Position numbers and translations under genes: made by a program
The notes under the pieces: model-generated
Told to the model about the DNA's origin: nothing
The model's input: only the letters and a program-made list of their open reading frames with translations
The model's database searches: none
Shown: one piece after another, positions 31,985 through 60,300 of the stretch
Layout of the letters: every line of letters begins with the position of its first letter
Numbering within the stretch: the stretch's first letter is position 1
Assembly: GCA_002269645.1 (NCBI GenBank)
Contig: NIVC01001659.1
Coordinates: 124,001-188,000 of the forward strand
Origin: Macrostomum lignano
Taxonomy: Eukaryota
Reading direction: 5' to 3'
Length of the DNA: 64,000 nucleotides

Positions 31985-32279
31985 CTGAAATGAACATCGG
32001 ATATTGAAGAGAAATTTTCGAAATTGCCATCCTATCGATTAGAAAGCTTGCTTTATTGCGCTACTCAAAATGAAGCCAATTTATCTCGTTGCCAAGGCTA
32101 CTGCTTACAGAGGTCTTCCCTACGTTTAGTTGAAGCGCAGGAGAATTTGTTAAATATATGCCGCTGAGGTCCCAGAATGGAAACCCGACATTAAGTTTGA
32201 ATGGAGTGTGAGTGTGAATGGAAATGCAGGAGAACACTCGTGTCGCCCGCAGATGAGGCTTGATGGAGAAGGGGTACAA

Positions 32280-39791: not shown

Positions 39792-40194
39792 TACCCAACT
39801 ATCCTATATTAATTATGACTAGCTTACGACCTTGTCCTTGACATTGTCCTTGGCTTAGCCATCTAAAAAATATGTAAATCCAAATCAATTGCAGTTTAAG
39901 TCATTTTAAAGAAGAGACTTGCCACTTCTTAAATGACACCAAACTTGTCATTGTCAATGCAACTTACCTTATTTTAATATTTACCTACCAAGTCTTTTGA
40001 AGGTTCATGCAATAGGCCTAAATTGAGTCTTTGTAGTAAGAGACCTTGAGCCTCTTCACGGGAATCGGTTCTAGAACCAGAATAAATTCGAGTTCTAGAA
40101 CCAGAACCAGTGTGAAATGAGGAGCTTTGAACCTATTCTATGTTTGACAGTCTTTACAATTTAATTTTGTCGTTCTTTGACTTTGTTTCCTCTT

Positions 40195-40348
40195 CACCCG
40201 TATATACAGTTTTGCTGGAATATATCACGAATAAGTGCAGCAAAAAGGCTCAGATATCATGATACGGTGATATTATATCATGATATTCTTAGCCAAAATG
40301 CTGCAACAATGTAGTCTATTTGGGATTGTTTATGGCGTCGTTTTAAAA
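40195..40348 (+). repeat. Left TIR of the KDZ element
   Basis: Exact reverse complement of 56622-56775. Confidence 0.95.
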
Positions 40349-40781
40349 GTCTAAATGAAGCATAATTCCCCCAGCTAGCATTGCATTAGCTTAGTAAGTT
40401 CCATTGTAGCACATGGCCATGCGAATTATATGCTTATCTCGGATCCTTGCTTAAGCGAAATGCCAAAATGAGCATTATTGTATAAAATGGTGTTGCTTAA
40501 CTGCATCACTTGTAGCTAGGCCCCCTACAAGGCGCAGATTGATATAAATTTATGGACTTTGATTAGTGTCCCTAACTAAATGAGCGCATTGCTGTGCTTT
40601 GTATTGTATGCATATCACACTTATCATGGTTATGTAGTTGTAGTTTTACCCGATTTAGTGCTTTTTTAGTCTAGGTGCCAGACCTTATTTAAGTTGATAC
40701 TTAAACCAGGCATTAGTCTGATTGAAAAATTAAATTGTAAATCAATTAACAATTACTCCCAATTTGCCATTTATAATAATA

Positions 40782-41453
40782 CAAGCTGTTGAAACCCGCG
40801 GATTTTGAACCCGGGGAATTCCAATACCCGGAACTACTTTTGCATGTATTCTGAAATCTAAGGCCATACACAAACAAAAACTTGTTAATAGTTAGTAGGA
40901 TAGAGGTAGACATAAAATGGAGCACATTCGTGTAAAATTAGGGTTTGAGACATTGTTGGCTGGGGTACTGCGCAGAATGTCAGGCAATGTCTGTCTGACT
41001 CTAAAACATATATTGCTAAACTCTGGTCTCTCCCTGTCTCTCCCTACATCCCTTGGATCCTTTAAAATTTCTATCGTCTCTTTGTTTCCTCTCATCTCTC
41101 TCGTCCCTCGTCTCTCCTCTCTCGTCTCTCCTCTCTCCCCTCTTCTTTCGTATCTTCCCTCATCTCTCTTCTCTTTCATTTCTCTTATCTTATCTCTTGT
41201 CTCTTCTTTTCTCTCTCCTCTCTACTTTTTCGTTTTCTCTCTTCTCTCTCCCCTCTCCTCTCTCCTCTCACCCCCTCTTCTCTCTTATCTTCCTTCTCCT
41301 TTCTATTTCTTTTCTCTCTTCTCTTAACTCTCTCATCTCTCCCCTCTTCTCTCGTCTCTTCCCGCACCTCTTTTCTCTCTCGTCTTTGCTCTCTCATCTT
41401 TCCTTTCTCTTCTTTTATCTTTTCTCTCTTATCTCTTCTCATTTCTCTCTGCT

Positions 41454-41548
<95 letters not shown>

Positions 41549-43483
41549 TCTCTGTCTTTCTCTCTTATCTCTCCTCCTCTCTCTACTCTCTCCCCTCTCC
41601 ATTCTCCTCTTTCCTTTCCTCTCTTCTCACTCACTTCTCTACCTTTGTCTCTCCTCTCTCCTCTCGTCTCTGTAACCTCTCCTCTGTTCTCTCTACTCTC
41701 CCGTCTTTTATCTGTTCACTCTCGTCTCTGCTCTCTCATCCCCCTCTTTAATCTGGCATCTCTGTCTTATATGTTCTCTCACCTCTCTCCTCTGTACTCT
41801 TTTCTTTCCCCTCTTTTGACTCCTCACTTTCCTTTCTCCTTTCTTCTTTTCTCTTCTCTTCCCTTTTCTATACTCTGTCTCCCTCTCTTCTCTCACTCCA
41901 CTCTCCTCTCTCCGTTATCTCTCATCTCTCATTTCTTATCTCTCCTTCAACCTCTCTCATCTCTAGAACCTTAGAGATGTAGAGATGTATCTTTATCTCT
42001 TCTCTCTTCCCTTTACTCTCTCATCTCTTCTTTCACCTGTTTCCTCTCTGCTCTCCTCTCTGCTCTCTGCTCTCTCCTCTCATCTGCAGCTCTCTGCTCT
42101 CTCATCTCTACTCTCTCCTCTCGCTTTTCCTCTCTCCCCTCTTCTCCCCTCTCTCTCATCGTCCTCACCCCCTCATCTCTCCTATTATCTTTTATCTTTT
42201 CTTTTATCCCCTCTGTCGCCTCTCCTCTCTTCGAATCGTCTATTCCTTCTTCTTTCCACTTTCATCTGCCCCTCAGCTATGAGCTGGATTCTTTATCTGG
42301 CCTTTGAGGTAAAAGTCTGCCCATCCCTGCTTGGAAAGCCAGTTTGTGGGACGTAGTACTCTCATGGCTGTTCTCATGCTTTGATCACGTCATCTTTCTT
42401 GCCAATTTGCAGCCCTGAAAGGAATTTGTGTATCTTCAGCTCCACTGCAGTCTGCATCAGTCTAACAACCAAGGAAATACGCATTTCTTAGGAGGCCATT
42501 TAATATTTATACAGTACCTTTAAAAGAAACCTAAAATTTCCATGGTGTGCCCAATTTAGTAGGGTTGTATTGCATTGCATCGCATCGCCTTTTCATAAAT
42601 CTTTCGCTTTTACAAACCATGCTGGATTCCCTCGATTTGCCAATTGCCAATTGCCATCCACTGTTAAACTGCTGCAGACTTGTGTCTATACAGAGGACAG
42701 TGGTTTGAATCTCTCGCTAAACTGTCTCTCCTCTCTACGCCTCTCCACTCGCGGGGTGCAGAGAAGGCTATAAATAAAGTTATTCCAAAACACTGTACAT
42801 TTGCTATGTACATTCAGTCCCATCGCCTGACCCTTCGTCTGGCTCTGGGGCAATGAGTGAGTGGCACAAACAACAGAAAAAGCAGACAAACTTCACATGC
42901 TTACAGTTTCTTTTTCGGTTGAGTTACAGAGTTGAAACTTTACATTTAGATAGAGAATGAGTCAATGAAGAATTGTGTCAAGTTTGAAGTCAATCGCTTT
43001 ACGTGGAGCAAACTTATGGCAGCTGAAAGTTAGTCAATTTTGAAACCTATTCACACCCTTTGCCCAGATCGGGAAAGAGAGGCAGGCGGGTGGAGGTTGG
43101 GGTGGCTGTCTCGCTGAAAAAAACAGCCAAACTTTAAAAGTGCACAGCGCCGTTCAGGATTAACTTTGAGACTCGAAATTTTACACGATTGTGTCAAAAT
43201 AGTTGAAAATTGCCTGTGTCAAATTTGAAGAGAATCGGTAGAAGTGGAGCGGCGCTATGGAGGATTAAGTGAAAAAATCGCGCATTTTGAGCAGTTTTTT
43301 GTACTTTTAGGTAGGAAGACTTGAGTCTAGGAAATTAAAAGGTAGCCTAAGACATTCTCCGTAGTAAGTTTAGGGTGGGTGTAAAGTTTGGTGTAATTTG
43401 GTTGAGCGGTTTGGGAGTCCATAGCGATCAAAATTGTCCACACACAGACAGACACACAGAGTTTTGATTTTTATAGTTAGAGA
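40782..43483 (-). mobile_element. Lep1-like non-autonomous Helitron inserted in the left arm of the KDZ element
   Basis: Minus strand 5' A|TCTCTAACTATAAAA followed by a (TGTC/TG) microsatellite; 3' hairpin cccggg...ccgcggg then CTTG|T; AT target site; sequence absent from the homologous right arm. Contains a CT-rich tract at ~41025-42270. Confidence 0.65.
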
Positions 43484-44084
43484 TTAAAAAATAATGTTGT
43501 TAATATCATTATATATAGTATTAGATATTAGAGATTTAGTATATCTAGTGGATAAGCATAGTTATATAGATTTGTATCAGTCATATTATACAATGAATAT
43601 CCAATGATGATTTTTTTTAATTTTTTAATTTTTGCTTGGTTATTGTTTCTCTCAGAATGAAATAGGCTTTGGGTCTAGCTTAGATATTTTAAATTAAAAT
43701 ATATAATAATAAGGAAAATAAAATCAAAATTACTATACTCTGGTCAGGCTTAACTTCTAAAAGCTAAATAAAAATAGACTAGATGTTTAAAAATAAGATA
43801 ACAATTTATATTAATATTTATAAAAATAAGCATTGACAAGGCTTATGCATAAACAGTTTCTTTGATTTAATAAGCTAATAAGCTAAAATGTCTCTGTTAA
43901 GTTTTTGCATGCCTTTTTAATTAGAAAAGAAAAGTAATAGCAATATAAACAATTAGGTTGATTTAGCCCTATTTTATTTGTACATTACTTTTCTATACCT
44001 ATTTCTTTCTTATTTGCATTTGCTCTCTCTTTGCTAGTTTGCTTTCTGTTTTACCCTTTTGCTATCTATTCTACATTGTTCCCT

Positions 44085-47000
44085 TGCTTTGCCTCTTGCT
44101 CTGCCACCTTGCTATATCCCCTGCTCTATCCCTTGTTCTCCCTCCTTGCTTTGCCACCCTGCTCTACCCCCTGTTCTATGCCTTGTTCTATGCCTTGCTC
44201 TGCCACCTTGCTTTGCCCCCTGCTCTGCCACCTTGCTTTGCCCCCTGCTCTGCCACCTTGCTTTGCCCCCTGCTCTGCCACCTTGCTTTGCCCCCTGCTC
44301 TGCCAGCTTGCTTTGCCCCCTGCTCTGCCAGCTTGCTTTGCCCCCTGCTCTGCCACCTTGCTCTCTTTCCCTGCTCTGCCACCCTGCTCTACCCTCTGCC
44401 CTCCATCCCTGCTTTGCCACCTAGCTCTGCCACCCTGCTCTGCTGCTCTGCTCTGCCGCCCTGCTCTCTATCCCTACCCTGCCACTCTGATCTCTATCTG
44501 TGCTCTGCCACCCTGCTTTCCCCTGCTCTGCCATCCTATTCTGCCACCTTGCTCTCCCACCTTCCTTTACCACCCTGCTTTCCCTTGCTCTTCCCCGCTG
44601 CTCTGCCCCCTGCTCTGCCCCCCTGCTCTGCCTCCCTGCTCTGCCCCCTGCTCTGCCCCCTGCTCTGCCACCTTTCTCTGCCATCCTGCTCTGCCTGTCT
44701 GCCACCTCTGCCACCCTGCTTTCCCCTGCTCTGCCTCCCTGCTCTGCACCCCTGCTCTGCCACCCTGCTTTCCCCTGCTCTGCCATCCTGCTCTGCCATC
44801 CTGTTCTGCCACCTTGCTCTCCCACCTTCCTCTGCCACCCTGCTTTCCCTTGCTCTGCCACCCTGCTTTCCCCTGCTCTGCCTCCCTGCTCTGCACCCCT
44901 GCTCTGCCCCCTGCTCTGCCCCCTGCTCTGCCACCTCGCTCTGCGCTCTGCCTCCCTGCTCTGCCCCCTGCTCCATCCCCTGCTCTCCATCCCTGCTCTG
45001 CCCCCTGCTCTGCCACCTCGCTCTGCCTCCCTGCTCTGCCCCCTGCTCCATCCCCTGCTCTCCATCCCTGCTCTGCCACCCTGCCCTGCCATCCTGCTCT
45101 CCCACCTTCCTCTGCCACCCTGCTGAGCCTGCTCTGCCATCCTGCTCTGCCACCTCTGCCACCCTGCTTTCCCCTGCTCTGCCACCTCTGCCACCCTGCT
45201 TTCCCCTGCTCTGCCTCCCTGCTCTGCACCCCTGCTCTGCCCCCTGCTCTGCACCCCTGCTCTGCCCCCTGCTCTGCCACCTCGCTCTGCCTCCCTGCTC
45301 TGCCCCCTGCTCCATCCCCTGCTCTCCATCCCTGCTCTGCCACCCTGCCCTGTCATCCTGCTCTCCCACCTTCCTCTGCCACCCTGTTTTCTCCTGCTCT
45401 GCCATCCTGCTCTGCCACCTTTCTCTGCCACCCTGCTGAGCCTGCTCTGCCATCCTGCTCTCCCACCTTCCTCTGCCACCCTGTTTTCTCCTGCTCTGCC
45501 ATCCTGCTCTGCCACCTTTCTCTGCCACCCTGCTTTCCCCTGCTCTGCCTCCCTGCTCTGCACCCCTGCTCTGCCCCCTGCTCTGCCCCCTGCTCTGCCA
45601 CCTCGCTCTGCGCTCTGCCTCCCTGCTCTGCCCCCTGCTCCATCCCCTGCTCTCCATCCCTGCTCTGCCCCCTGCTCTGCCACCTCGCTCTGCCTCCCTG
45701 CTCTGCCCCCTGCTCCATCCCCTGCTCTCCATCCCTGCTCTGCCACCCTGCCCTGCCATCCTGCTCTCCCACCTTCCTCTGCCACCCTGCTGAGCCTGCT
45801 CTGCCATCCTGCTCTGCCACCTCTGCCACCCTGCTTTCCCCTGCTCTGCCACCTCTGCCACCCTGCTTTCCCCTGCTCTGCCTCCCTGCTCTGCACCCCT
45901 GCTCTGCCCCCTGCTCTGCACCCCTGCTCTGCCCCCTGCTCTGCCACCTCGCTCTGCCTCCCTGCTCTGCCCCTGCTCCATCCCCTGCTCTCCATCCCTG
46001 CTCTGCCACCCTGCCCTGTCATCCTGCTCTCCCACCTTCCTCTGCCACCCTGTTTTCTCCTGCTCTGCCATCCTGCTCTGCCACCTTTCTCTGCCACCCT
46101 GCTGAGCCTGCTCTGCCATCCTGCTCTCCCACCTTCCTCTGCCACCCTGTTTTCTCCTGCTCTGCCATCCTGCTCTGCCACCTTTCTCTGCCACCCTGCT
46201 GAGCCTGCTCTGCCATCCTGCTCTCCCACCTTCCTCTGCCACCCTGCTGAGCCTGCTCTGCCATCCTGCTCTGCCACCTCTGCCACCCTGCTTTCCCCTG
46301 CTTTCCCTCCCTGCTCTGCACCCCTGCTCTGCCACCCTGCTCTCCCACCTTCCTCTGCCACCCTGCTCTGCCCCCTGCTCTGCCACCCTGCTTTCCCCTG
46401 CTCTGCCACCCTGCTTTCCCCTGCTCTGCCTCCCTGCTCTGCCCCCTGCTCTGCCACCTCGCTCTGCCTCCCTGCTCTGCCCCCTGCTCCATCCCCTGCT
46501 CTCCATTCCTGCTCTGCCATCCTGCTCTCCCACCTTCCTCTGCCACCCTGCTGAGCCTGCTCTGCCACCCTGCTCTCCCACCTTCCTCTGCCACCCTGCT
46601 CTGCCCCCTGCTCTGCCACCCTGCTTTCCCCTGCTCTGCCTCCCTGCTCTGCACCCCTGCTCTGCCACCCTGCTCTCCCACCTTCCTCTACCACCCTGCT
46701 CTGCTCCCTGCTCTGCCACCCTGCTTTCCCCTGCTCTGCCTCCCTGCTCTGCCCCCTGCTCCATCCCCTGCTCTCCATCCCTTCTCTGCCACCCTTCCCT
46801 GCCATCCTGCTCTCCCCCCTGCTCTGCCACCGTGCTCTGCCTCTTGCTCTGCCATCCGCTCTGCCCCCTGCTCTCCCTTCCTGCTCTTCCTGCGCTCCCT
46901 CCCTGCACTCCCTTCTGCTCTCCCCCTGCTCTGCCACCGTGCTCCGCCTCTTGCTCTGCCACGCTGCTATGCCTGCCCCTGCTCTCCCTTCCTGTTCTTC

Positions 47001-47260
47001 CTGCGCTCCCTCCCTGCACTCCCTTCTGCTCTACCCCCTGCTCTGCCACTCTGTACTGCACCTTTCCGTCCCTGCACTCCCTTCTGCTTTGCCCTCTGCT
47101 CTCCCTCCCTGCTCTTCCTGCTCTCCCTCCCTGCACTCCCTTCTGCTCTACCCCCTGCTCTACCCCTGCACTCCCCTGCACTCGCTGCTATGCCATCCTG
47201 CTCTGCCCTTGCTGCCTGCCCTAATCCTGCTCCTTTGCCGCCTGCTCCAACCATGCTTTA
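44085..47260. repeat. Pyrimidine-rich (ccctgctctgcc) array in the left arm of the KDZ element
   Basis: Low-complexity array with block duplications; source of the many Pro/Cys and Arg/Gly ORFs. Confidence 0.92.
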
Positions 47261-47502
47261 CCGTAGCTTCTATGCTTTTTTGTATTCTTCCCCAACGGCC
47301 CCTGTCTCTAGCCAATAGGCAATTTTATCCTGTGTTTGTTAATTTAGCTTGGTAACTGAATTCAGTGTTGTGTTTATTATCTCGACAAACTGCAACCTGA
47401 AGGCCTAAAAGTTGCTTCAGTATGAGTATAAATTGCTCTCTACGTTCATTGTATATAAGATTACGACAAAATGTTGCAATTTTTTCTTGCAGTCACAACC
47501 CA

Positions 47503-48589
47503 ATGTCCCGCCGCTTAAGTGCTTGGAATGAACATGTTAGGAGAAATTGCAACCGGAAGGAAAAGCTTGCAGGTATGGCAATATTTATTAAGAATATCGT
47601 TTTACTATGTTGAAAATTTCATCATCAAAATCTGAAAGGAGCAAGAAGCGAAACCACCGCTCAACCGTCTAGTGGAGGACACCTATAATTCTTGTATTTA
47701 ATCAATTCGTCGATTGCTGCACATCACAGAACACTGTATTCCTCAGTCACATGTGAATACTTCGCAACTATTGCTTGGTCACATATGCTCGTATTCCAGT
47801 GAAATCTAAGGAGTCCATAGACCTACACACCTACAGCATCTGTTTATCCAGAACATTACAGGAGCTCTGCTCAGCACCACTTATTGCAACATTCCTCAAC
47901 GTACATTTCATGTATCGCATTTTGTTTAGTATCATCCATAAAGCGCTCTTAATGTGAATTATAACATTGTGCACCTTTTTATATTATTATATAAGATTAA
48001 GCATGGGTTTTTTATTGTTTTTTTCAGACCAAGCACAATGGTCTGCCACCCTAAGTCATACGCTGATTTAGATCCAACAAGCCGGCAAAACTTAATTAGT
48101 TCGGCTGCAGCTCCAAGTCTTGCTGAACGTCAGAAGAAACTGAAAAAGTCGGTGTACAAGCTCGTAAGTCTGTTTGTCATTTCCAGAAATTTTCAGCAGT
48201 TTCTCTTCATTAACTTGTCAAAACTAGTGTTTACGGTTTTTTAACCAATTCTGCTTTCACAGTTGGAATTGGCCGAGGATTCTGAAATGCACGCCGTTGT
48301 GCTGCTCCACCCAAAAAATGGAGGCACAACGAGTGTCTACGAAACAACAGAAGTTGCAGGATTTTCTGAGGGAGCCAATATTCCTTTGGTATGTAATAAA
48401 TAATAGTTTATTTTAGAATTATTTGCTTACGTACAGCCGGCGCTGGAAGGGTGTTGAGTAATTTATGACGATTATCAATTGGCACAAAATTTTAGGCTTT
48501 CCAATCTGCAGTGCTCAACGGGTCAAATGAGCCTACTACTGCTGCAAGCCTACGCCAAGCAGTTGCCTCGCTTCTTCAGACAAAATACA
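47503..48589 (+). CDS. Uncharacterised second gene inside the KDZ element; exons 47503-47572, 47837-47900, 48028-48163, 48263-48388, 48496-48589+ (3' end unresolved)
   Basis: Four GT-AG introns with compatible phases (1, 2, 0, 0) give MSRRLSAWNEHVRRN...SLAERQKKLKKSVYKL|LELAEDSEMHAVVLLHPKNGG...NIPL|AFQSAVL...SLRQAVASLLQTKY. Exon 2 has a weak donor. Confidence 0.55.
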
Positions 48590-48620
48590 GTAAAACAATA
48601 GCTCATTTTTGTACAATTAA

Positions 48621-49702
48621 CAGTAGGAATACCAAGCCGTTTTTCCGCCCGTCGAACTACCAAGAGGGGGGAATTCCCCCCTGACAATTCTCCCGCTGCG
48701 CCGGAACGGAGCAACGCAGGCACACGAAATTCAAAAACACGGGCCAACTTTCTGTTGCGCACCTTCTCAAACAAGAATCAAGTCGCCAGCCCTCCGGACC
48801 GTTGAGATATTCGACGGTTCTGCCAGAAGGTCGGATTTTTCCCATAAGCGTTAGTGTATTCAGTGCACCCCTGTGCGCCAATCAGCACTGCGCCTTAGCG
48901 CAGCCTTGCAATGCCTCCAAATTTCATCAGCACGTCGACCACATGTGTCTGCATCAGCTCTGACTTCGTTGGTCACTAGTGTTCACCCAGGCGGAGCTTC
49001 TGGACCTTCAACAGGTGGCACCAAGTGACTATGGACACCCTGATAGGAATTTCTCAAGTTTCGCTGATCAAGCCTCGACAGTGGGCAAACCTCAACTTCT
49101 GGACACCCTCAGCTAGTCTCTCAAGCGTTTGGTCATCACCCGAACGCCGTCGGCACCATCAACAGGTGGCATCAATAATAACAAATTACCTCATCATATT
49201 TACATAATTAAGTCGGGTGATTAAAAACTGTTTGGGATTCCTGCTGAGAATAACCAGGAGTTACAGATTGCCCATTATTGAAGCTTGATAAGAAAAACCT
49301 AACATAGGTGCAAAAGGAACCTAACATATGTCCATAGTCATCTGATGCCACCTGTTGAAGATGCCGACAGCGTCCGGGTGATGACCGAATGCTTGAGAGA
49401 CTAGCTGAGGCTGTCCCGCGTTTGAGGCTTGCCCATTGTCAAGGCTTGATCAGTGAAACTCGAGAAATTCCTATCAGGCTGCTCATAGTCACCTGGTGCC
49501 ACCTGTTGAAGGTGCCGACGGCGTCGGGGTGATGATGGAAGGCTTGAGAGACTAGCTGAGGGTGTCCAGAAGTTGAGAAGGTGCGCAACAAAAAGTTAGC
49601 CCGTGTTCTTGAATTTCGTGTGCCTGCGTTGCTCCGTTCCGGCGCAGCAAAAAAATTGTCAAGGGGGGGGGGGAAATTCCCCCCCTCTTGGTAGTTCTAT
49701 TG
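48621..49702. mobile_element. Non-autonomous foldback-like DNA transposon with TTAA TSD (possibly piggyBac-related)
   Basis: TTAA at 48617-48620 and 49703-49706; termini cagtaggaataccaag / cttggtagttctattg; ~130-bp subterminal IRs; internal inverted modules. Confidence 0.8.
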
Positions 49703-49802
49703 TTAATATCATTTAGGACTAGGCATTTTTTAGGTAGACATAGGTAGACATTTTTTATTCTTTGTTTCAAATGAAATACTGGTATTCTTAAGTCTAGTGG
49801 TA

Positions 49803-50193
49803 GGGTCTACGAACTTTGCCACCCGGAGAAAGTTGCCAGCCATAAAGTTTCCGGGCGAGAATCTTGTTAGCCAGAAAGTTGCTAGCGGAGAAAATTTGCA
49901 GCAAGGTATTAACCAGCTCAGAATTTCAACATCTGTCTAATTTTACAGTTATGAATCAATTACAAAACCTAATACATGCATTTCTTTTTTAAATACAGGT
50001 TCTTAATGCAGCTAATATACCATAAATGTATTATAGATAGATATACAAAAGATCTTACAATTTACAATTGATGCATAACTGCAAAATTAGTCAGATGTTG
50101 AAATTCTGAGCTGGTTAATACCTCGCTGCAAATTTTCTCCGCCAGCAACCCTCCGGCTAGCAAAATTCTCGGCTGGCAAAGTTCGTGCTATCC
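49803..50193. mobile_element. MITE with ~150-bp TIRs
   Basis: acgaactttgcc...gcaaggtattaaccagctcagaatttcaacatctg and its reverse complement at ~50085-50190; TSD degenerate. Confidence 0.75.
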
Positions 50194-50481
50194 TAATGGA
50201 CACTTGTCCTGAGGTTTGCAATCAAAGATAAATATTAATGATTATAAATCGTAAAAATGATGAAATCCCAGGATAAGCAAATTGACAAGGCCTTCAAAAA
50301 CTTGCATTAATTAGCAACAAGAAACGGATATTTACTGGCAAAAGAATTATTCAAACGGTACCCAAAAAGTTCATAGCTCGTAGTTACAGAAATTCAAGTG
50401 TCAAAACAGCAATCAGTTATCTAGATACAGTCTTCGTCGGTATCTGATGATATTGTTGTTGCCTGAGAGCTCTCACTGTCC

Positions 50482-53400
50482 TTACTGAAGTCCGAAAGGG
50501 GCACTAGAAAAAAGTGTTTTGAGTTTTACGTATAATGTAAAAACAGAATCGGAATTTGCAAGACTGGCTAATAAATGCAAATACTCACTTGATTCAATAA
50601 TTTCACTGTCGCATCTGGTATTAGCTGCTTCATGGAGAATCGGGAACTCGGACGGAAAGGCTGACAGATGAGATCTTACTAAACGACAAATGCCATTTTC
50701 ACGCATGTGAAGCATTGTTGAAATCGGTAATCCTCTGGCCTTTTGAATCTGCGAGCGGGTTACTTGTAGCGCATCAACGAAAAAAAATGATGCTCGCCTC
50801 ACTTCGGCTGCTACTCGTTGTGACTCCTCTTTACAGCGGAAGTACAAGTCTCGCAGCTTAACAGCTCGAGCTTTCTGTGCGATATCCCCATTAATGTGCA
50901 GCAGCTGCTGAAATCCTTCAGAATTCGGGGAAATGAAATCTTGATAGTCAAGTTGGTCACTCTGGTGCAGACCGTTAAATTTCGCTACAATGCTCCTGGT
51001 CTTTTTCAGAAGCTTTTGTATCGTTACAGTCAGCAGTCGGTTCATTCGCTGGCCACGCTCAGTTGCAGCATGGTCAATTAGGTACTGGCGCTCGCATGCA
51101 ACACGATACAAGCTGCGGATGGCTTCAGCTTTCCTTGAGGTTGCTGCTGTGGGTTTAGCCTTCAAGGAAGACAAAACTGTCTCCCGCGACTCTCCTGCCT
51201 TCTGTAGGAATTCGTCAACAGTTACTGAAAACGAAAAGTGCAGCTCCTGCTTAAAAAGGTGGATGGAAACGCGCTCTCAAATCTAATAAGTAAAAAAAAC
51301 TACTTCGATTTTTTTCACTGCAACCTCGTTTAATGTTTCAAAAGTGCTGTCTAGTATTGAATTTTTTTGTACAGTATTAGCGTCTACATTTTTTTCATAA
51401 AAACTCACGAGTGCTTTTGCTTTCTTAAAATAACTTTGCGAACTCTGTCTCAAAGCGCAAGAATGCTATCTCTTCAACCTTTCGGCGACTTTGCAACCAA
51501 GCAGCTGAAAATGGATAGATGGAAATGAATTTTTCATTCAGATTGATAATATACAAAAAAATAATAAATATGAACACAGTATATCACAACGACATACGAA
51601 TTAATTCACACAAATAAAATACTAACTAATCGACATGATGCGTGCAAAGTTCATAGTGTCAGCGACGTAATTCAAAAAATTGCGACGATTATCATGTGCC
51701 ATCTCCTTTACTTGAGGTCCAAATCTGCGGAATGGCGGCCAAATGCGCTCAACGCTCTCGCCATCTATCAGGCCCACAGACTCGGTGGCACGAATGCCGA
51801 ACAACAACTGACAACGAAGAACGTGACCATAAACGTGCAATGCCGGCAAGACAAAAGTTAATCTTGGATCGCAGAATCGACCAGCCAATTTGCAACTTAT
51901 ATCGTAAGATACGATTATTGGAACGTGGGGAGGAATATCGCGCAGCATCTGCTGAACCATGCACTCGCTGTAGTTGAGGCTGTAAAAAAGCAAAATAACT
52001 GGCGTTCAAAAATCAGAAAGGAAAACCAGTACTCGCAGCAAAGCACTGAAAGGAATTACCGCTCGCCAGGAGTAGTCACATCTTCCATGTACCTGATGAA
52101 CGAGTGTGGGCATGAGCCACAAAATAAACCGTACACATCCAATTTGTTGCGATCAGCTCCGCTCCGCTGGTAAGACCCTGGCCTCGACCGCCGGCGCTCC
52201 AGTTGGCGCAGTGCCCCTCAGAAGGCTGAACACCATTGCTGTGGTCTACGTCGATAAAGAAGCCAGAAGCGGGTGGCATAGTAGCTTTACCGGCGTTCCT
52301 GCGATGGCGGATGCCAAAGCACGCATCCATCATAAGAAACACTGGTGACGGATTATCGGATGTTTCATTTTTCTACAAATAGAGTGGGGCACTGCCATCA
52401 ACTAACTGTGTGTTGCTATGGTAAAGACTGTAATTAGTAGTTTTACAGAACCATAAAGTAGATTCGGCTTTACAAATGCTGTACTGATTACTATTTCTAC
52501 GACAATGACGGAAAATCAAGACACGAAGCAAAATGAAGGAGCACAGAGTTAGTATTAGACAATCCGTACCACATGACACGCCGGACAGGACGCGTTCTGT
52601 CCCCGTCGTAAGCTCTGAAGAACGCTCCGAAAAGCACGAAATGATCCATTGACGTTGAGTGTTCGGAAAAGGTCAACCTGAATTCAAAAGTGGGGCTCTT
52701 CAGACAAGAAAATAAAAGTTCATGACATGACCCAAACAATAGCCACAAAACATACCGTCAAGGTTGTGGGTATCCACATTGAATTCCGAAAGTGCCTCAG
52801 TGCAGCACACAGTGAGGAGAGTGAGGCTGTACATTGGGAGTTGAGACAGTCAATAAGAAGAAGCAAACCAATGGCCACGGCCGTCAACAGCCTTGCGTTT
52901 TCAGGCCTTGCTTGGATTGGCCAGAAACCGTGGGTCAGCAGTGCTTCACGGTAGGTAGTGCAGGAGCAAACCTCCACTTTAATAGGAATCTCGTTGACTG
53001 GAAAGAAGAAACAATTAGCCATACTTAACACTATAATTCAATTTGTAAAGGTTGTAAATGAGTCAATTACATTTGTGATAAGCTTTCGCGTAAAAATTTA
53101 AGGGAAGTAGCCTGGCGGTAGATGCGAAATATACAATAAAAACTATAGTTATATAATAAGGGTACTACCCCCATTCAATTATTACTAATTAGCTCCAAAA
53201 TTTCCAGAAGGATAGAGGTACTAGACAACAACAAATATGTTTACAGTATAACATAGATTACGAACAGCATCTCCCTCGCCGGCTGAGATCTTTTATGGTC
53301 TTATAAAGCAGTTTATTTATGCATTCGCAAGCCAACACATACCTTCCTCGGTGATAACAGTTACCGGAAATATACTAGATATGCCGGTACACCCACACTG

Positions 53401-54253
53401 ACGCAAAAGGCACACCTCTGTCGGGACAACTTCATAAAAATTTCCCTGAAAAATTGAGTAAATGATAAAATTTTTCTCAGACTCGCACTTAAGAGTGTTA
53501 GTGAATCAAATATGCGTGCTACTATTCTCTTTAATAGTAAGTGAACAGGCATAAATTTGTACAGTAGCCGCATACATCCAAGTCATTTTAAAACGTAAAA
53601 AACCGACTTAGACGTTATTTTTAATATATGCATCCTTACTGCAATTCTAAAATTAACAAAGGGAAGGTGACTTATGCTCGTATATGGAATTTAAGTTGCA
53701 TTTCTTACATTCCACAGCTGGACAGCATGCGGAGGTCGGTGCGAGTGGCGCGCTTCGAGACACTCGAGACAGACCGAAAGTAGGTGACACTTCTCGCACC
53801 GATACAATCCATCTGCAGAGCCACATACGACACATTTTTTCAGAGAATAGTGTTTTGCCACACCATCAGCAAGAGTTCCTGTGGAAAGTAGCTCATCCCA
53901 GCGGTCGCTTTCGGCCTCACAAAACTCTTTGAAACGACTCCGCTCAGCTTGATTATTATCATCTTCGTCGTCTTCAACATCGTCCAAGGGCTCAACGGCA
54001 CCCTCGTGCTCCAAATCGGATTCGGGGTCTGGACAGCGTGACGAACTACTGCAAATGAAAAGAAAATAGAAAAAATCTTTTTTCTCTCAACTGAAAAAGT
54101 AATCCAAACGAAAAGCAGCTTGCAAATATTAATAACTTACGCGGAACTCTGCTTTGAGGTAACAATGATACGAATAACTTTCGCTCGACTTCGGGCAGAA
54201 CCACGATAGAACTTGGCGGAAGTCTTTGCCACATTAATTTTTCGTCGTCCCAT
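50482..54253 (-). pseudogene. CxC-KDZ transposase, ~9 exons: 54253-54141, 54048-53709, 53445-53343, 52997-52756, 52677-52570, 52372-52060, 51979-51627, ~51504-51435, ~51230-50482; one 5-bp frameshift
   Basis: CxxC...YRCxxC...CxxC...H...PxH...WNG; VEVCSC...LLTHGFWP; CPAC; MMDACF; GLFCGSCPH; PGERLNY; YDISCKL; PALHVYGHVLRCQ; DGESVERIW. Splice phases are consistent through exon 7; the last two junctions are unresolved. Confidence 0.88.
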
Positions 54254-54369
54254 GACTCTGAATTTAAGAACGCGTTATCATATATTTAAAGCTGAGCTGT
54301 TTAACGAGTAGCTCCTAGAAAGCTGGAAACTCAAATATACTGTAAGCAGACGCATAACAAGGAGCAGAG

Positions 54370-55440
54370 AAGCCGGGTAGAGCCCGGATAGAGCAGAGGG
54401 CAGAAGAGCAGACAGTAGGGGCAGAGAACCAGGGATGGAATAGGCAGCAGGAAGCAGGACCAGAGCAGAGGGCAGAGCAGGAGGGCAGAGCAGGGGGAAG
54501 AGCAGCAAGCAGAAGAGCAGGGGCAGAGCAGGAGCGCAGAGCAGGAAGGCAAAGTAGGGGGCAGAGTGGGGGGCAGAGCAGGAAGACAAAGTAGGGGGCA
54601 GAGTGGGGGGCAGAGCAGGAGGGCAGAGCAGGAGGGAAGAGCAGGGACGCAGAGCGGGAAGACAAAGTAGGGGGCAGAGTGGGGGCAGAGTGGGGGGCAG
54701 AGCAGGAAGGCAAAGTAGGGGGCAGAGTGGGGGGAAGAGCAGGAGGGAAGAGCAGGGACTCGGAACAGGAAGACAAAGTAGGGGGCAGAGTGAGGGGCAG
54801 AGCAGGAGGGAAGAGCAGGGACGCAGAGCAGGAAGACAAAGTAGGGGGCAGAGCAGGAAGGCAAAGTAGGGGGCAGAGCAGGAAGGCAAATTAGGGGGCA
54901 GAGCAGCGAGCAGAAGAGCAGGGACAAAGCAGGGAGCAGAATGGTGGGCAGACCAGGAGGCCAGAGCAAGGAGGCAGAGTAAGAGTGAAGAGCAGAAGCT
55001 GGAAGAGCACGAGGGAAGAACATGGGCAGAGTGGGGGGCAGAGCAGGAGGGAAAAGCAGCAAGCAGAAGAGCAGGGGCAGAACAGGAAGGCAAAGCAGGG
55101 GGCAGAGCAGGAGGGCAGAGCAAAAGGTCAGAGCAGCAAAGAAGAGCAGGAGGGAAGAGCAGCGAGCAAAAGAGTAGGGGACAAAGTGGGGGGGAGGGGG
55201 CAAAGCAGCAAGCAGAGCAATAGGCAGAGCAGGGAGGCAGAACAGGAGGGCAGAGCAGGGAGGCAGACTGGCAGAGCAGGGGCAAGGCAGGGCAGAACAG
55301 CAAGCAGAGCAGGAGGGCATGGGCATAGCAGGGAGGCAGAGCAAAGGGTAGAGCAAGGAACAGAGTAGGACACAAGAAGGTAGGGCCAAAGGGCAGAATA
55401 AGGAACAGAGCAAATGGTAGAGTAGGGAGATAGAGCTGGA
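54370..55440. repeat. Purine-rich (ggcagagcagg) array in the right arm, mirror of 44085-47260
   Basis: Reverse-complement-like composition of the left array. Confidence 0.9.
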
Positions 55441-56621
55441 TGCAAATAGGGGTCAAAATAAAGAGACAAACAGATGGGGCAAAGTAAGGAATAGAACAAT
55501 ATGGCAAAAGAACATATAAAGTAGACAGCTATAGAGTAGAATAAAAGGAAAAAGAATAAAGCAAAAACAAACAGGAAAAGTATAAGTATAAAGAAGTACC
55601 AAATAAATAGCAAAAGGTTTAAATCGATCAAACAATTATTGACTTTTATTCTTATTAATAAGGCCCCTAAACATTTTAACAACTTAATATATAATATAAT
55701 AGCAAGCTAATAGCAATTCATTAGCCTATTATATCAAAGAAATTTTAGACTTGCTAGGCCTATTTTTATAAATATATATATAATATATAATATATTATTA
55801 TTTTATATTAAATAATATAGCTTTTTCTTTATTATCATTTCATGACTTAGTTCTTAAATTAAAGCCTAGTTTCCTAGGCCTACCATAAAAATACATAAAA
55901 TAGGCTTTATGTCTTTCTGAGTCAACTAACAGGCCAAATTCCCTTTGGCTTTATTATCTTTAGATATTTATTTTAAAACTTTAAGTTCTGCTTTTGCTCA
56001 GTTTAGGCCTAATCTAACATATTAAAATGCTATTTTTAATATTTGAGAAGCCATATAACCACCAAATAATCATTAAAAAACTTAATAAAATCAATATTGT
56101 ATTGACTTGATAAAGACGAATAATATGATCAATATAAGTTTAGATAAGGTTATAAATATAGGATACTACAGTGTATTAATATTACAGTAGATCATGGATG
56201 ATTGATAGGCATTATAATTTATTTTACTAATTAGGACTAATGCCTTAATGGTTGAAATGGGTGTACAAACTGAAAAAAGGTCTAGCACCTAGACTAAAAA
56301 GAACTAGGCTACATTGGGTAAAGCAAAGCTACTAACTACATAACCATGATAAACTGTGTGATGCAATGCATTTTCATGCCTATTTTTCATGCCTATTTCA
56401 GCCTATTCAATAATCAAAATCAATAAATTTAGATTCATCTGCGCCCTATATACCGTAGATGATATACAGTTAAGCAACCCTAACCCTATCCAATGTTCAT
56501 TTTGCTAAAAGAAGCATACAAGCATAATTTACATGGCCACGTGCTACAGCCCAGGATACAGCAAAGCTTCCTATGCTACATGTATAATGCTTAGAGAAAA
56601 CAAAATATACTTGATTTAGAA

Positions 56622-56775
56622 TTTTAAAACGACGCCATAAACAATCCCAAATAGACTACATTGTTGCAGCATTTTGGCTAAGAATATCATGATATAATAT
56701 CACCGTATCATGATATCTGAGCCTTTTTGCTGCACTTATTCGTGATATATTCCAGCAAAACTGTATATACGGGTG
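56622..56775 (-). repeat. Right TIR of the KDZ element
   Basis: Exact reverse complement of 40195-40348. Confidence 0.95.
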
Positions 56776-57348
56776 TTCCTCTTGGATATGACAAAAAACG
56801 GAATAATTATATAACAATAATAAAAAATTGACGATTTCAAACATTTTTTACTGTTAAAGTGTAAATATGACAACGGTTCGAGAAAATTTATCGAACCATA
56901 ATCCAGAACCAGAACCATGTTCCGGAACTGATTCTGTTTTTCGAACCATCGATATGAAGAGCGTCGAACCGGTTCGGAACTGGTTCCGTTTTTCGAACCG
57001 GCGATATGAAGAGGCTCCTTATTTTTTCGGCTATTAGCCAAACAAACAAAAGCCAATAAGCACATTCTCCTTGGAGAGACAGATAATTTTACACTTAAAC
57101 AAAAAAAACAAAATTTCTCTAAATAAATGGGGTGGGTGCTATTGAATATATTAGAAAAAGGACTGCGGCTGAAATGTACATGTATAGGCCTAGGCCTATA
57201 CACGATTTAATGAAATGAAAAGTATGTGTAGGCTTGACTTACTTGACTTAGCTGCAGGGGGCGTCCGGCGGATGCAGCGAGGAGGCGGAGGAGACCGCCC
57301 ATTCCGCTAGCCCCTGGCGACCAACGACTTCCGTTGAAGTGGTGTCGC

Positions 57349-60300
57349 TCAGGGGGACCCGTCGGTCTCGCCTGCAGCGCGGTCCTCCTCACCGACGGTG
57401 GGGAAGAAATCAGCTCGTCCGGTGTCCCTGAGGTACCGGGCGAGCAGTGGGATGCTCTCGGGCCTGCAAACGTCGGAGAGAACCGGGTTTGGCCCGAGGT
57501 GAGTAAGCCTGGCCCTGGTGAAAACCGGGCAGTGGCAGATAAAATGCTCGGCGTTTTCACTGCCTGAGCGGCAGAAGGGGCACCGCTCCTCGGGTACTTG
57601 GCCCTGAAGGAAGCGGTGGCGAGAGAAGCAGCCATGCCCGGAGAGGGCCATGCTAACTGCTCTGAGGTCTCTGCGGTTGAGCCTGAGGAGGGCTCTACGC
57701 AGGAGAGGAGAGGGACAGGGGACGGCAGCACGGGATTGCCTACAATTCCGGGTGTCGTGCCACCTGCGGAGATGCTCGGAGTCAGCCCAGCGCTTAACGC
57801 GGGAATTGATCACCGAGGCGGGGATGGGGGCACCCGGGCCCGGCCCCAATAGCGCGCCGGCGGAGCCAGCCTTGGCCAGCAGGTCAGCGCGCTCGTTGCC
57901 GAGGAAGCCGGCGTGGCCCGGGATCCATCTGAGCTCCACCTGGTTGCCTAGCGCAAGCCCGTTGAGCTGGGTGTTGCAGTCCAGGACGGACCTGGAGCTG
58001 GCGGTGCTGCGGCAGAGGGCCCGAAGGGCTGCTTGGCTGTCAGAGTGAAAAATAAATTTCCGGCCGCTAAGCTGCCTTCGGCGCAGCTCTGCCGCGCAGG
58101 AGCTGATGGCAAGCACCTCGCTCTGAAAAACACTGGAGTTGAGCCCAGTGTGCTGGGAGTAGCTCCACACCACTTCTCCCTTGAAGAAGACGCAAGCTCC
58201 GAAGCCTGAAAGACCATGCCTCATAGAGCCGTCAGTGTAACAGTGGACTTCAGAGTCGCTCCAGCTGTCACTCGCCTCGTGTCGAGGCTGAATGGTGACC
58301 TTATACCTTTGGCTCAGGAGAAGGGTGGCTGGGATCGAGTCCGTGAGGATGTTGAGCCCGCCACACTCCTCGAGAGCCTTGAGGCAGAGGTCAGAGTGCG
58401 GGATAAGCGACCGCTTCTTAAAGGCCCGCACTTTCTTGAAGGCCACCCCAGCATCCAGAAGACGCCGGGTGCTCTTCGCCGCCTCTCCTTTGATATAAAT
58501 ATCCAAAGGAGGGGCGCAGAGGAAGGCATTCATGCCTTCAAAAGGAGTAGAGGGTGGAGCGCCCATAGTCATGCGGCAGGCTCTGCCCTGGATTTTGTAG
58601 AGAGCGTCGAGGTTGCTCTTGACGCTCAGGCCGCTAGCCCACACGAGGCTGGCGTAACTGATCGAGGGGCGGATGATGGCAGTGTAAATCCACCACAGCT
58701 TCCTGGGGGTGAGCCCCCAGGTGGTGCCCACGGCGCGCCTGATCTGAGCCAGTACAGCCAGGGCTTTTTTGGCTTTAGTTTGAATGTGCGGAGTCCAGTT
58801 AAGCCTGTGGTCCAGAGTGAGGCCCAGGCAGCGGACCTGCTTCTCCATGGAAATATTCTTTCCATAGAGGGTGAGGGGCTTAATGGTCCAGAGCAGTTTG
58901 TTGGTAAACATGACTGCTGTGGTTTTCGACTCTGAGAGTCTAAGGCCACATTGGTCTGCCCAACGCTCCGCTCGTCCCAGAAAGCCCTGCAGAAGGTCTC
59001 TGATGGTATCAACCGAGGGGCCCGCGCATATCGCGGTCACATCATCGGCATAGCCCACCTTGAGAATGGGGTCGTGGAGATCACTGCAAAGCAACTCATC
59101 CATGACCATGTTCCAGAGAACGGGGGTGAGAACGCCGCCCTGGGGGCCCCCTTTCAGGACAGGCACCGAAAGAGAGCTGCCGCTCAGGTGGGCCACAACA
59201 GTGCGGTTTCGGATCATGAACATGATCCACCGGACAAGGTGAGGGTGCGTGGCCCTGGATTCCAGGGCTCTGCAAAAGGCCTCGAAGATGACGTTGTCGA
59301 AGGCCCCCTCAATGTCCAGGAAAAGCGAGAGGGCAAAGCCGCTGCCAAGAACGGCCCTCTCCAGGAAGTCAACAATGACATGGAGAGCACTCTCGGTTGA
59401 CCTGCCCGCGCGGAAGGCGTGCTGGTTCTGCGAGAGTGGGAAGCGCTTCAGCTCGAACGAAAGTAGGCGCCAAAGCACCAGTCTCTCGAGGAGCTTGAGG
59501 CAGAAAGAAGTGAGGCTGATAGGCCTGAAGGCCTTCACCGATTGGTAGTCGCTCTTTCCAGGCTTGGGGATAAAGACCACCCGGGCCTCTCTCCATGCAA
59601 CTGGTACATAGCCCAGCTCCACACAAGCTCGAAGGAGACGACAGAGCAGGTCCAGGAAGCGGTGGTTTTTCACCGCCTCGTGCAAGAACGCTGGGTAGAT
59701 GCCGTCGGGCCCAGGCGCCTTGAACGGGTTAAAGGACCTTGCCGCTCTAATAATGCGGTCTTTGGTGATCATAGACTTTGCTAGGCCTTGCCCTCCCACT
59801 GTGTGGTCGGGCGGGCCCTGCTGAGTCGGAGATTTAGGGAAAAAACTGTGAGCATGAGCTCTAGAGTCTCTTCCGAACTCTCTGTGACCGAGCCGTCAGG
59901 TCTCTTCACAACAGAGAGTTTAGAAAAACGGTCATTAGTGAGTGCCTTAACCACGCGGGCTACGGGGCGAGAGCCCTCAAGCCCTTCGCAATATTGGCGC
60001 CACTTGGCCGTCTTGGCCCTTCTGACTTGGCCCTTAAACTCGTGGATCGCACGGGTATAGGCCTCTCTGTCAGATGGGTCTTTGGTTTTGAGCGCTCGCC
60101 TTTGGAGGGTCCTGGCTCGGCGCCGAAGGGCCCCGAGCTCTGGGTTCCACCAGGGAGCAGATTTCTTGCCTTTATAGGCCTTTAGGGGGCAGGCTGCTTC
60201 AAAGGCAGTGGTGATCGCCCCGCCCAGGGAGGAGGCGAGATCGTCCACCACCTGGCAGTCAGAGAGGTCACTGGGGGGTCAAGATCCCGAAGGCCGCGGC

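What the first reader, a model, noticed from the sequence alone, without database searches (positions are those of the whole stretch)
40187..56783. Complete 16.6-kb two-gene KDZ/Zisupton-type transposon with long TIRs and kb-scale mirrored arms
Seen: 8-bp TSD TTCCTCTT, 154-bp perfect TIRs (CACCCG...CGGGTG), degenerate inverted homology continuing kilobases inward, a 9-exon CxC-KDZ transposase with its D/D/H/E catalytic motifs present, and a second spliced gene facing it. Established: Zisupton elements make 8-bp TSDs and have spliced transposases; fish Zisupton proteins carry SWIM, SAP and often Ulp1 domains, none of which I see here, whereas CxC1/CxC2-type clusters are typical of Kyakuja/Dileera KDZ elements. 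Inference: an undescribed animal KDZ lineage with a bipartite, convergent two-gene architecture.
Basis: partly seen in the sequence, partly recalled or inferred. Interest (0 to 1): 0.85.

Follow-up and report, generated by a model that had tools for sequence, protein, structure and literature searches.

The report
Defective KDZ transposon in a flatworm
This is one 16.6-kb insertion of a cut-and-paste "KDZ" DNA transposon in the flatworm Macrostomum lignano; its ends are textbook, but its transposase gene is broken and I found no second gene, so it is a well-preserved but ordinary member of a known transposon group.

Summary
The structural observation holds. An 8-bp target-site duplication (TTCCTCTT) flanks 154-bp perfect inverted repeats (173 nt at 98%) that start CACCCG, enclosing 16,581 bp. 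The "kb-scale mirrored arms" are partly real. They consist of about 0.55 kb of degenerate subterminal inverted homology, a short mirrored AT-rich block, and a 13-bp minisatellite in opposite orientation on the two arms.

On the minus strand lies a spliced gene for a zinc-finger + CxC-like + KDZ (PF18758) transposase. As assembled it is not intact. A 5-bp tandem duplication frameshifts the catalytic exon, a conserved downstream exon ends in a stop, and an otherwise invariant Arg is Pro.

The "second gene facing it" is not supported. There is no Pfam domain and no homologue among 5.8 billion proteins. The long ORFs are artefacts of a stop-free satellite, and part of the interval is a nested foldback repeat.

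The host is Macrostomum lignano. Relatives with the same architecture occur in several M. lignano paralogue families and in lancelets, molluscs, echinoderms, a nemertean, a priapulid and fish.

The hallmarks (8-bp TSD, long TIRs, CxC1-type cluster, no SWIM or Ulp1) resemble Dileera-type KDZ elements such as Cryptococcus KDZ1 more than canonical fish Zisupton.

Verdict: new member of a known kind, low to moderate interest.

The parts
40187..40194 (.). Left copy of the 8-bp target-site duplication TTCCTCTT
40195..40367 (+). Left terminal inverted repeat. It is perfect over 40195-40348, starts CACCCGTATATAC, and contains the palindrome ATATCATGATA(T) twice (40254-40264 and 40275-40286).
40368..40740 (+). 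Left subterminal region with degenerate inverted homology to 56602-56212 (73.6% over the whole 595-column HSP, which includes the TIR)
41087..42157 (.). CT-rich microsatellite / low-complexity tract, present on the left arm only
   Evidence: composition
42185..42410 (.). Non-coding patch about 80% identical to a segment just upstream of the KDZ gene in another M. lignano KDZ family (L004-L007, 9440-9655). There are stops in all frames.
43806..44081 (+). AT-rich block before the satellite, mirrored at 55783-55480
44082..47053 (+). Array of about 3 kb of a 13-bp minisatellite (TGCTCTGCCACCC) in + orientation. It is open in all six frames, which explains the 466-881 aa pseudo-ORFs.
48650..49700 (.). 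Nested foldback/MITE-like repeat unrelated to the element. Other copies lie at 36306-36761 and 17844-18168.
49848..50179 (.). 332-bp palindrome (77% self-complementary), probably another small nested repeat
50421..54253 (-). KDZ transposase gene, disrupted.
- Exons: 54253-54141, 54048-53709, 53445-53343, 52997-52756, 52677-52570, 52372-52060, 51979-51627, (7b: 51504-51325), 51246/51224-50803 (the ORF reads on to 50485), and 50462-50421.
- Encoded domains: basic N-terminus, C4HC2H B-box/HIT-like zinc finger, CxC1-like cluster, KDZ catalytic domain, helical C-terminal region.
52156..52165 (-). 5-bp tandem duplication GGAGC GGAGC. It frameshifts exon 6 between the first catalytic block (MMDACFG) and the second (LDVYG..C-P-H..GER), with a stop 28 codons later.
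   Evidence: the intact reading is seen in P0002 and P0003
51424..51436 (-). AAGTTATTTTAAG: the family-conserved exon 7b runs into TAA here. Removing one T restores a frame with a GT donor and an AG acceptor, so this is a probable second lesion.
54453..55343 (-). Array of about 0.9 kb of the same minisatellite, in inverted orientation
56212..56602 (-). Right subterminal region, degenerate mirror of 40368-40740
56603..56775 (-). Right terminal inverted repeat (perfect over 56622-56775, ending ...ACGGGTG)
56776..56783 (.). Right copy of the 8-bp target-site duplication TTCCTCTT

Best explanation
The interval is a single insertion of a class II (cut-and-paste) DNA transposon of the KDZ (Kyakuja-Dileera-Zisupton) superfamily in the genome of the flatworm Macrostomum lignano. 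It sits in a repeat-dense region, next to the 3' end of a LINE.

Inferred mechanism, by analogy with KDZ elements that have been shown to move:
- The element-encoded transposase has an N-terminal zinc finger, a CxC cysteine cluster and a KDZ catalytic core. The core carries the conserved D...D/C-x-H...GER...YD...H-x3-H-x3-CQ...DGE-x2-ER motifs.
- It recognises the long CACCCG... terminal inverted repeats, excises the element, and reinserts it at a staggered 8-bp cut. Repair of that cut produces the TTCCTCTT duplication.

This particular copy cannot supply the enzyme. Its gene carries a 5-bp duplication frameshift, a probable second frameshift, and an Arg-to-Pro change at an invariant position. 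Because its ends are intact, it could move only if a functional transposase were supplied in trans by another copy.

The rest of the 16.6 kb is non-coding: mirrored minisatellite arrays, a CT microsatellite and nested small repeats. There is no second gene.

Shown: the termini, the TSD, the domain content, the lesions, the host species and the relatives. Inferred: the catalytic mechanism, binding of the TIRs by the transposase, and mobilisation in trans.
For: - TSD and TIR.
- KDZ domain at 96.7 bits against a cut-off of 26.6, over the full length of the model.
- Exon model with canonical splice sites.
- Homologues: M. lignano A0A1I8GH28 is 98% identical and A0A1I8GP41 is 50% identical over 98% of the query. 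There are 1952 relatives at E<=1e-3.
- Conserved catalytic motifs across 13 relatives, including a fungal one.
- A second M. lignano KDZ family (L003) forms a 9.9-kb single-gene element with 259-bp TIRs that start with the same CACCCGT.
- The frameshift is also present in the independent gene model A0A1I8HMS9. That model reads GAELIATNW and then skips the rest of exon 6.
- No coding signal outside the transposase.
- Literature: 8-bp TSDs for Zisupton and Dileera (PMC12730594); experimentally observed transposition of Cryptococcus KDZ1 with an 8-bp TSD and 236-bp TIRs (bioRxiv 10.1101/2024.08.15.608186).
Against: - No other copy of this exact family could be retrieved as DNA. Copy number, empty sites and the generality of the 8-bp TSD are therefore untested.
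- In the one related element with both ends (L003), the flanks match over 6 bp, or 8 bp only if a 2-bp slip is allowed.
- The frameshifts could in principle be assembly errors.
- Short exons of an orphan second gene would escape my searches.
- The structure prediction was too poor (pLDDT 44.8) to test the fold.
Confidence: 0.8

Rival explanations
1. The element is an intact, autonomous single-gene KDZ transposon, and the frameshifts are sequencing or assembly errors.
For: The TIRs are perfect over 154 bp and the TSD is perfect, which suggests a young insertion. The second lesion lies in a T-run, a typical site for long-read errors. A 98%-identical protein model (P0002) reads through the first site.
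Against: A 5-bp tandem duplication is not a typical homopolymer error. The same shifted reading appears in a separate gene model (P0001) that differs from the window at three residues. The family also carries Pro in place of an Arg that is invariant in 13 relatives.
Confidence: 0.15
2. One reading: a bipartite two-gene transposon in which a second, spliced + strand gene converges on the transposase.
For: Multi-gene KDZ elements exist in fungi (PMC12730594; bioRxiv 10.1101/2024.08.15.608186). About 8 kb of the element is neither transposase gene nor obvious repeat. In another M. lignano KDZ family, a SET-domain gene is called next to the transposase in one of the four loci shown (L005).
Against: Outside the satellite, the longest stop-free stretch on the + strand between 47100 and 50500 is 100 aa and looks non-coding. 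There is no Pfam hit on either strand. No homologue exists for any + strand segment of 40 aa or more in 42160-44050 and 47200-50480, although the database holds the M. lignano proteomes. tblastx against eight related loci finds only repeats. The 466-881 aa ORFs at 44-47 kb are open in all six frames because of the 13-bp satellite. The interval 48650-49700 is a nested repeat with copies outside the element.
Confidence: 0.05
3. It is a domesticated (host) KDZ-derived gene that happens to lie between inverted repeats, not a transposon insertion.
For: KDZ-domain proteins without TIRs or TSDs exist (bioRxiv 10.1101/2024.08.15.608186). RefSeq annotates the animal homologues as ordinary "uncharacterized proteins".
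Against: The perfect 8-bp duplication directly abuts 154-bp perfect inverted repeats. The ORF is disrupted. Several paralogous families exist in the genome. The surrounding region is TE-rich.
Confidence: 0.02

Closest known systems
Dileera-type KDZ transposons: Cryptococcus neoformans KDZ1-KDZ3 (bioRxiv 10.1101/2024.08.15.608186) and Zisupton-1_PGr of Puccinia graminis (PMC12730594)
   Same: 8-bp TSD; long TIRs (236 bp in KDZ1, 154-173 bp here); large size (9-11 kb there, 16.6 kb here); transposase built from a CxC1-type cluster plus a KDZ domain, with no SWIM; much non-transposase DNA inside the element. In the word-indexed search the best hit outside Macrostomum was a Puccinia CxC1+KDZ protein.
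   Different: The host is an animal. The gene has 9-10 exons. There is an extra N-terminal B-box/HIT-like zinc finger, shared with other animal relatives. The CxC1 match is below Pfam's threshold. No accessory ORFs or TET/JBP gene are present. Placement in the Dileera clade was not tested against labelled reference sequences.
Zisupton sensu stricto (the fish Xiphophorus element of Bohne et al. 2012, recalled from memory and not read here; canonical architecture KDZ + CxC4 + SWIM as stated in bioRxiv 10.1101/2024.08.15.608186)
   Same: 8-bp TSD, TIRs, multi-exon transposase, animal host, KDZ catalytic domain.
   Different: No SWIM, CxC4, SAP or Ulp1 domain at E<0.1. The protein is about 680-840 aa rather than about 1200 aa.
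Kyakuja (Kyakuja-1_LB and related elements, PMC12730594)
   Same: KDZ catalytic domain; 5'-CA...TG-3' termini.
   Different: Kyakuja makes 7-bp TSDs and has no TIRs. This element has an 8-bp TSD and 154-bp perfect TIRs.
CACTA/EnSpm elements
   Same: Termini of the CAC...GTG type, large size, repeat arrays in inverted orientation on the two arms.
   Different: CACTA elements make 2-3-bp TSDs and encode an unrelated transposase family. Here the TSD is 8 bp and the transposase is KDZ.
Other M. lignano KDZ families (GCA_002269645.1: PAA89046.1 locus L003; PAA87534.1 loci L001/L002; PAA68009.1 family L004-L007; PAA67003.1 locus L008)
   Same: Same protein architecture, and all fall in one clade in a rough NJ tree. 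L003 has the same CACCCGT terminus and long TIRs. All left ends that could be defined start with 5'-CA. Large inverted tandem arrays lie next to the gene in L001/L002 and L004.
   Different: Only 25-50% protein identity. The terminal sequences differ beyond CA (CATCAGTG..., CAGTTTATGG...). L003 has no minisatellite arms. The P0161 family has almost no introns.

Membership tests
KDZ superfamily (Kyakuja-Dileera-Zisupton) | KDZ transposase domain (Pfam PF18758) above the gathering threshold | tested here: met
   67.4 bits on exon 51993-51622 as it stands. 96.7 bits over model positions 3-217 of 217 after removing the 5-bp duplication. The cut-off is 26.6.
KDZ superfamily (Kyakuja-Dileera-Zisupton) | N-terminal CxC-type zinc-chelating cluster upstream of the KDZ domain | tested here: inconclusive
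   CxC1 scores 22.4 and 19.5 bits, below the cut-off of 26.9. The cysteines align with relatives that do pass (CxC1 up to 45.9 bits and CxC2 up to 44.2 bits in Branchiostoma, Pecten and Astyanax).
KDZ superfamily (Kyakuja-Dileera-Zisupton) | Conserved catalytic-core residues present | tested here: inconclusive
   All motifs are encoded, but they are split by a frameshift. In this family the invariant C-R-H motif is C-P-H.
KDZ superfamily (Kyakuja-Dileera-Zisupton) | Transposon structure: defined termini flanked by a TSD | tested here: met
   154-bp perfect TIRs and a perfect 8-bp TSD.
Zisupton (sensu stricto) | 8-bp TSD | tested here: met
   TTCCTCTT on both sides. The 8-bp rule is taken from PMC12730594.
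Zisupton (sensu stricto) | Canonical domain set: SWIM zinc finger plus CxC4 (and often Ulp1/SAP) together with KDZ | tested here: not met
   A Pfam scan at E<=0.1 finds only KDZ, weak CxC1 and weak zf-HIT. The closest animal relatives likewise lack SWIM.
Zisupton (sensu stricto) | Phylogenetic placement of the transposase inside the Zisupton clade | not testable with these tools
   No labelled Zisupton, Dileera or Kyakuja reference sequences could be obtained, and the third homologue search returned only 5 hits.
Dileera | 8-bp TSD with TIRs | tested here: met
   Compared with Zisupton-1_PGr (PMC12730594) and Cryptococcus KDZ1 (bioRxiv 10.1101/2024.08.15.608186).
Dileera | Phylogenetic placement with Dileera reference transposases | not tested
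   The evidence is only indirect. The best non-flatworm hit in the word-indexed search is a Puccinia CxC1+KDZ protein at E=1e-6.
Kyakuja | 7-bp TSD and no TIRs (PMC12730594) | tested here: not met
   8-bp TSD and 154-173-bp TIRs.
CACTA/EnSpm | 2-3-bp TSD and a CACTA-type transposase | tested here: not met
   The TSD is 8 bp and the transposase is KDZ.

The most novel reading that the evidence does not exclude
Macrostomum KDZ elements may form a flatworm-specific clade whose long mirrored arms are functional parts of the transposon rather than passive expansions. The arms would be the TIR, the subterminal block and the inverted minisatellite arrays, and they could act as arrays of transposase-binding sites or as hairpin-forming ends. 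On this reading the clade would be the first structurally defined CxC1-type (Dileera-like) KDZ transposons in animals.
Probability: 0.15. Interest if true: 0.45.

Novelty: new member of a known kind. Interest (0 to 1): 0.3.

Why it matters
KDZ elements are among the least characterised eukaryotic DNA transposon superfamilies. Movement has been shown directly only in Cryptococcus. In the papers I could read, complete element structures are described for fungi, and for animals only through citation of the fish Zisupton paper.

A flatworm copy with perfect ends gives exact termini (5'-CACCCGT...), the TSD length and a gene model for an animal CxC1-type lineage. Proteins of this lineage are annotated only as "uncharacterized" in many phyla.

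The practical uses are modest: better repeat annotation of the very repeat-rich M. lignano genome, correction of chimeric gene models, and a starting point for finding an intact copy. It does not open a new question.

Tried and rejected
1. Retrieving other copies of this family as DNA failed. The look-up of encoding contigs found nothing for P0001, P0002 or P0003, so TSD consistency, copy number and empty sites could not be checked. No paralogous empty site exists in the window.

2. The second-gene search was negative throughout: six-frame inspection, Pfam on all stop-free segments of 40 aa or more on both strands, a 5.8-billion-protein search with the + strand segments, and tblastx against eight related loci.

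3. The third homologue search, using a 13-sequence profile, returned only 5 proteins because of the candidate cap. Labelled Kyakuja, Dileera and Zisupton references were therefore not obtained, and clade assignment stays open.

4. AlphaFold2 on P0003 with a 7-sequence alignment gave pLDDT 44.8 and pTM 0.28. I did not run a fold search, because matches to such a model would be meaningless. The PDB sequence search found nothing relevant.

5. Rfam found no RNA family in the window.

The ends in L008 are ambiguous, since similarity extends beyond CACCCG.

7. I considered reading the 5-bp duplication as a micro-intron and rejected it. There is no GT-AG, and 5 bp is too short for an intron.

8. The original Zisupton paper is not held in the library. 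Statements about it are from memory or from papers that cite it.
Full report
**Observation.** The coordinates are exact.
- TTCCTCTT occurs at 40187-40194 and again at 56776-56783, in both cases touching the inverted repeats.
- The repeat finder gives arms 40195-40367 and 56603-56775, 173 nt at 98%. A direct alignment shows the outer 154 nt to be identical, starting CACCCGTATATAC.
- A 41-nt probe from the terminus matches only these two sites in 64 kb, with none expected by chance.
- The element is therefore 16,581 bp between the duplications. An 8-bp match next to perfect 154-bp inverted repeats is not a chance arrangement.

**The "mirrored arms".** BLASTN of the left half against the reverse complement of the right half gives two kinds of signal.
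- The terminal homology continues in degenerate form (73.6%) to about 40740 on the left and 56212 on the right.
- Much further in, 43806-47050 matches 55783-54420. Most of this is a 13-bp minisatellite, TGCTCTGCCACCC. It forms about 3 kb on the left arm in + orientation and about 0.9 kb on the right arm in - orientation, and it occurs nowhere else in the window.
- A short AT-rich block just outside each array is also mirrored.
- The arms are thus collinear mirror images, but the left arm has about 2.6 kb of extra material. That includes a 1-kb CT-rich microsatellite.

**The transposase gene.** Stop-free segments on the minus strand between 54253 and 50421 carry the KDZ domain (PF18758, E=1.9e-18 on one exon as it stands) and a weak CxC1 match.
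- The closest database proteins are from Macrostomum lignano: A0A1I8GH28 (98% identity), A0A1I8HMS9 (85% over the aligned part) and A0A1I8GP41 (50% identity over 98% of the query). This identifies the host.
- Mapping these proteins back and reading the junctions gives a 9-exon model with canonical GT-AG at every intron.
- The concatenated exons are out of frame. Exon 6 contains GGAGC GGAGC (52165-52156), whereas the intact homologues read ...TSGADRNKLD... The extra 5 bp shifts the frame, and a stop follows after 28 codons.
- Removing one GGAGC gives 676 aa with a full-length KDZ match of 96.7 bits.
- The model A0A1I8HMS9 differs from the window at three residues and shares the same LINE flank. 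It carries the same shifted reading (GAELIATNW), so the lesion is probably real and present at an allelic or homeologous locus.
- A further exon, 7b (51504-51325), encodes AWLQSRRKVEEIAFLRFETEFAKLF. It aligns with all family members but runs into TAA within a T-run. Deleting one T restores an 836-aa frame with proper splice sites, so this is a probable second lesion.
- Homologues also show that the C-terminus reads through the predicted last donor.
- An alignment of 13 relatives, including a fungal one, has these invariant positions: F281, C317, C-R-H 347-349, G-E 362-363, Y-D 389-390, H412, H416, C-Q 420-421, D-G-E 436-438 and E-R 441-442. The window family has all of them except the Arg, which is Pro.
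The gene as assembled, however, cannot make a transposase.

**The second gene.** I could not find one.
- Outside the satellite, the longest stop-free + strand stretch between 47100 and 50500 is 100 aa, and nothing looks like protein.
- Pfam finds nothing on either strand in the non-transposase, non-satellite parts.
- A search of 5.8 billion proteins with every + strand segment of 40 aa or more in 42160-44050 and 47200-50480 found nothing at E<=0.01. That database contains the M. lignano proteomes and readily returned the transposase models.
- tblastx against eight loci of related M. lignano KDZ elements finds only the nested repeat, the satellites and one non-coding patch.
- The impressive ORFs at 44-47 kb (up to 881 aa) are open in all six frames at once, because the 13-bp unit has no stop in any phase.
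- The interval 48650-49700 is a foldback repeat with copies at 36306-36761 and 17844-18168, outside the element. The interval 49848-50179 is a small palindrome.
- An orphan gene made of short exons cannot be excluded without transcript data.

**Relatives.**
- A full HMMER scan with the 703-aa paralogue finds 1952 proteins at E<=1e-3.
- The nearest are further M. lignano families. After them come proteins from Branchiostoma, Pecten, Mytilus, Littorina, Priapulus, Tubulanus, Lytechinus and Astyanax, all named "uncharacterized".
- They share a B-box-like zinc finger, a CxC1/CxC2 cluster (significant in them) and KDZ. More distant members add Ulp1. None shows SWIM.
- In a rough NJ tree the Macrostomum sequences form one clade.
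- I fetched DNA for four paralogous families from GCA_002269645.1. L003 holds a 9.9-kb element with one called gene, bounded by 259-bp TIRs (98.5%) that begin CACCCGTGT, the same seven bases as here. Its flanks are TTCTCATT and CTCATTCA, which gives 6 matching bp, or 8 if a CA slip is allowed.
- Two other families have left ends CATCAGTG... and CAGTTTATGG.... Their right ends were out of reach.
- Large inverted tandem arrays lie beside the gene in L001/L002 and L004.

**Mechanism.** The best reading is an ordinary cut-and-paste insertion. A KDZ transposase binds the long TIRs, which contain the palindrome ATATCATGATA(T) twice. It excises the element and integrates it at an 8-bp staggered cut. 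This is inferred from Cryptococcus KDZ1, for which new insertions with 8-bp TSDs and 236-bp TIRs were observed directly (bioRxiv 10.1101/2024.08.15.608186). This copy is defective and could move only in trans. Whether the mirrored satellite arms matter is unknown.

**Comparison with known families.**
- According to PMC12730594, Zisupton and Dileera (Zisupton-1_PGr) make 8-bp TSDs, whereas Kyakuja makes 7-bp TSDs and lacks TIRs.
- According to the Cryptococcus paper, canonical Zisupton proteins combine KDZ, CxC4 and SWIM, whereas the Dileera-clade KDZ1-3 combine CxC1 and KDZ.
- By these hallmarks the window element resembles Dileera-type elements and fails the Zisupton domain test and the Kyakuja structural test.
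- True clade membership needs a tree with labelled references, which I could not build.
- Metazoan KDZ homologues are already reported (PMC9297572). I found no paper on them in flatworms.

**Verdict.** This is a real, neatly bounded KDZ transposon insertion with a disrupted gene, and there is no evidence for a second gene. It is a new member of a known kind, and interest is about 0.3.

Noticed in passing
window 57349-62697 (minus strand): A non-LTR retrotransposon (LINE) lies immediately to the right of the element. It has an ORF1-like protein (62697-61048), an endonuclease (61051-60182), and an RT/RNase H ORF with a C-terminal zinc knuckle (59799-57349). The UniProt model A0A1I8HMS9 fuses the last 83 aa of this LINE ORF (57603-57355) to KDZ exons, so it is a chimeric gene prediction.
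   Followed up: partly
window 48650-49700, 36306-36761, 17844-18168: A foldback/MITE-like repeat family is present in at least three places in the window, one of them nested inside the KDZ element. It also occurs inside the KDZ loci L001/L002 (around 16180-17110).
   Followed up: partly
window 42185-42410; L004-L007 9440-9655: A non-coding patch of about 230 bp is roughly 80% identical between this element and a KDZ family whose transposase is only about 25-30% identical. There it sits just upstream of the KDZ gene. It could be a shared regulatory module, a recombined segment or an unrelated small repeat.
   Followed up: partly
window about 52109-52107 (minus strand): The C-R-H motif, invariant in 13 KDZ relatives including a fungal one, is C-P-H in this family. 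P0002 carries the same change.
   Followed up: partly
L005 13238-14236: A 300-aa SET-domain gene is called directly downstream of the KDZ gene in one of the four loci shown for the P0161 family. It lies in a segment of about 1.8 kb that is absent from the L004 copy. It may be cargo, or an annotation or duplication artefact.
   Followed up: no
L001 21552-28258; L002 21211-27844; L004 15291-22480: Multi-kb near-perfect palindromes built from tandem arrays (97-99% identity) lie beside the KDZ genes of two other M. lignano families. This echoes the mirrored satellite arms seen here.
   Followed up: no
window 10120-14069 (minus strand) and 14567-17199 (plus strand): Two retroelements are apparent from their translations alone. 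One is a gag plus pol with RT (YQDD), RNase H and integrase, typical of an LTR retrotransposon. The other is an RT/RNase H ORF followed by an ORF ending in a tyrosine-recombinase-like motif, which looks DIRS-like.
   Followed up: no
window 1464-2757, 18933-19796, 22195-23010, 25760-27370, 29888-32030: Several long tandem-repeat arrays give long ORFs on both strands or in more than one frame. The whole window is repeat-dense.
   Followed up: no
window 33744-34625 (plus strand): This ORF has hydrophobic segments that resemble the C-terminal half of a seven-transmembrane receptor. It may be the only ordinary host gene fragment near the element.
   Followed up: no
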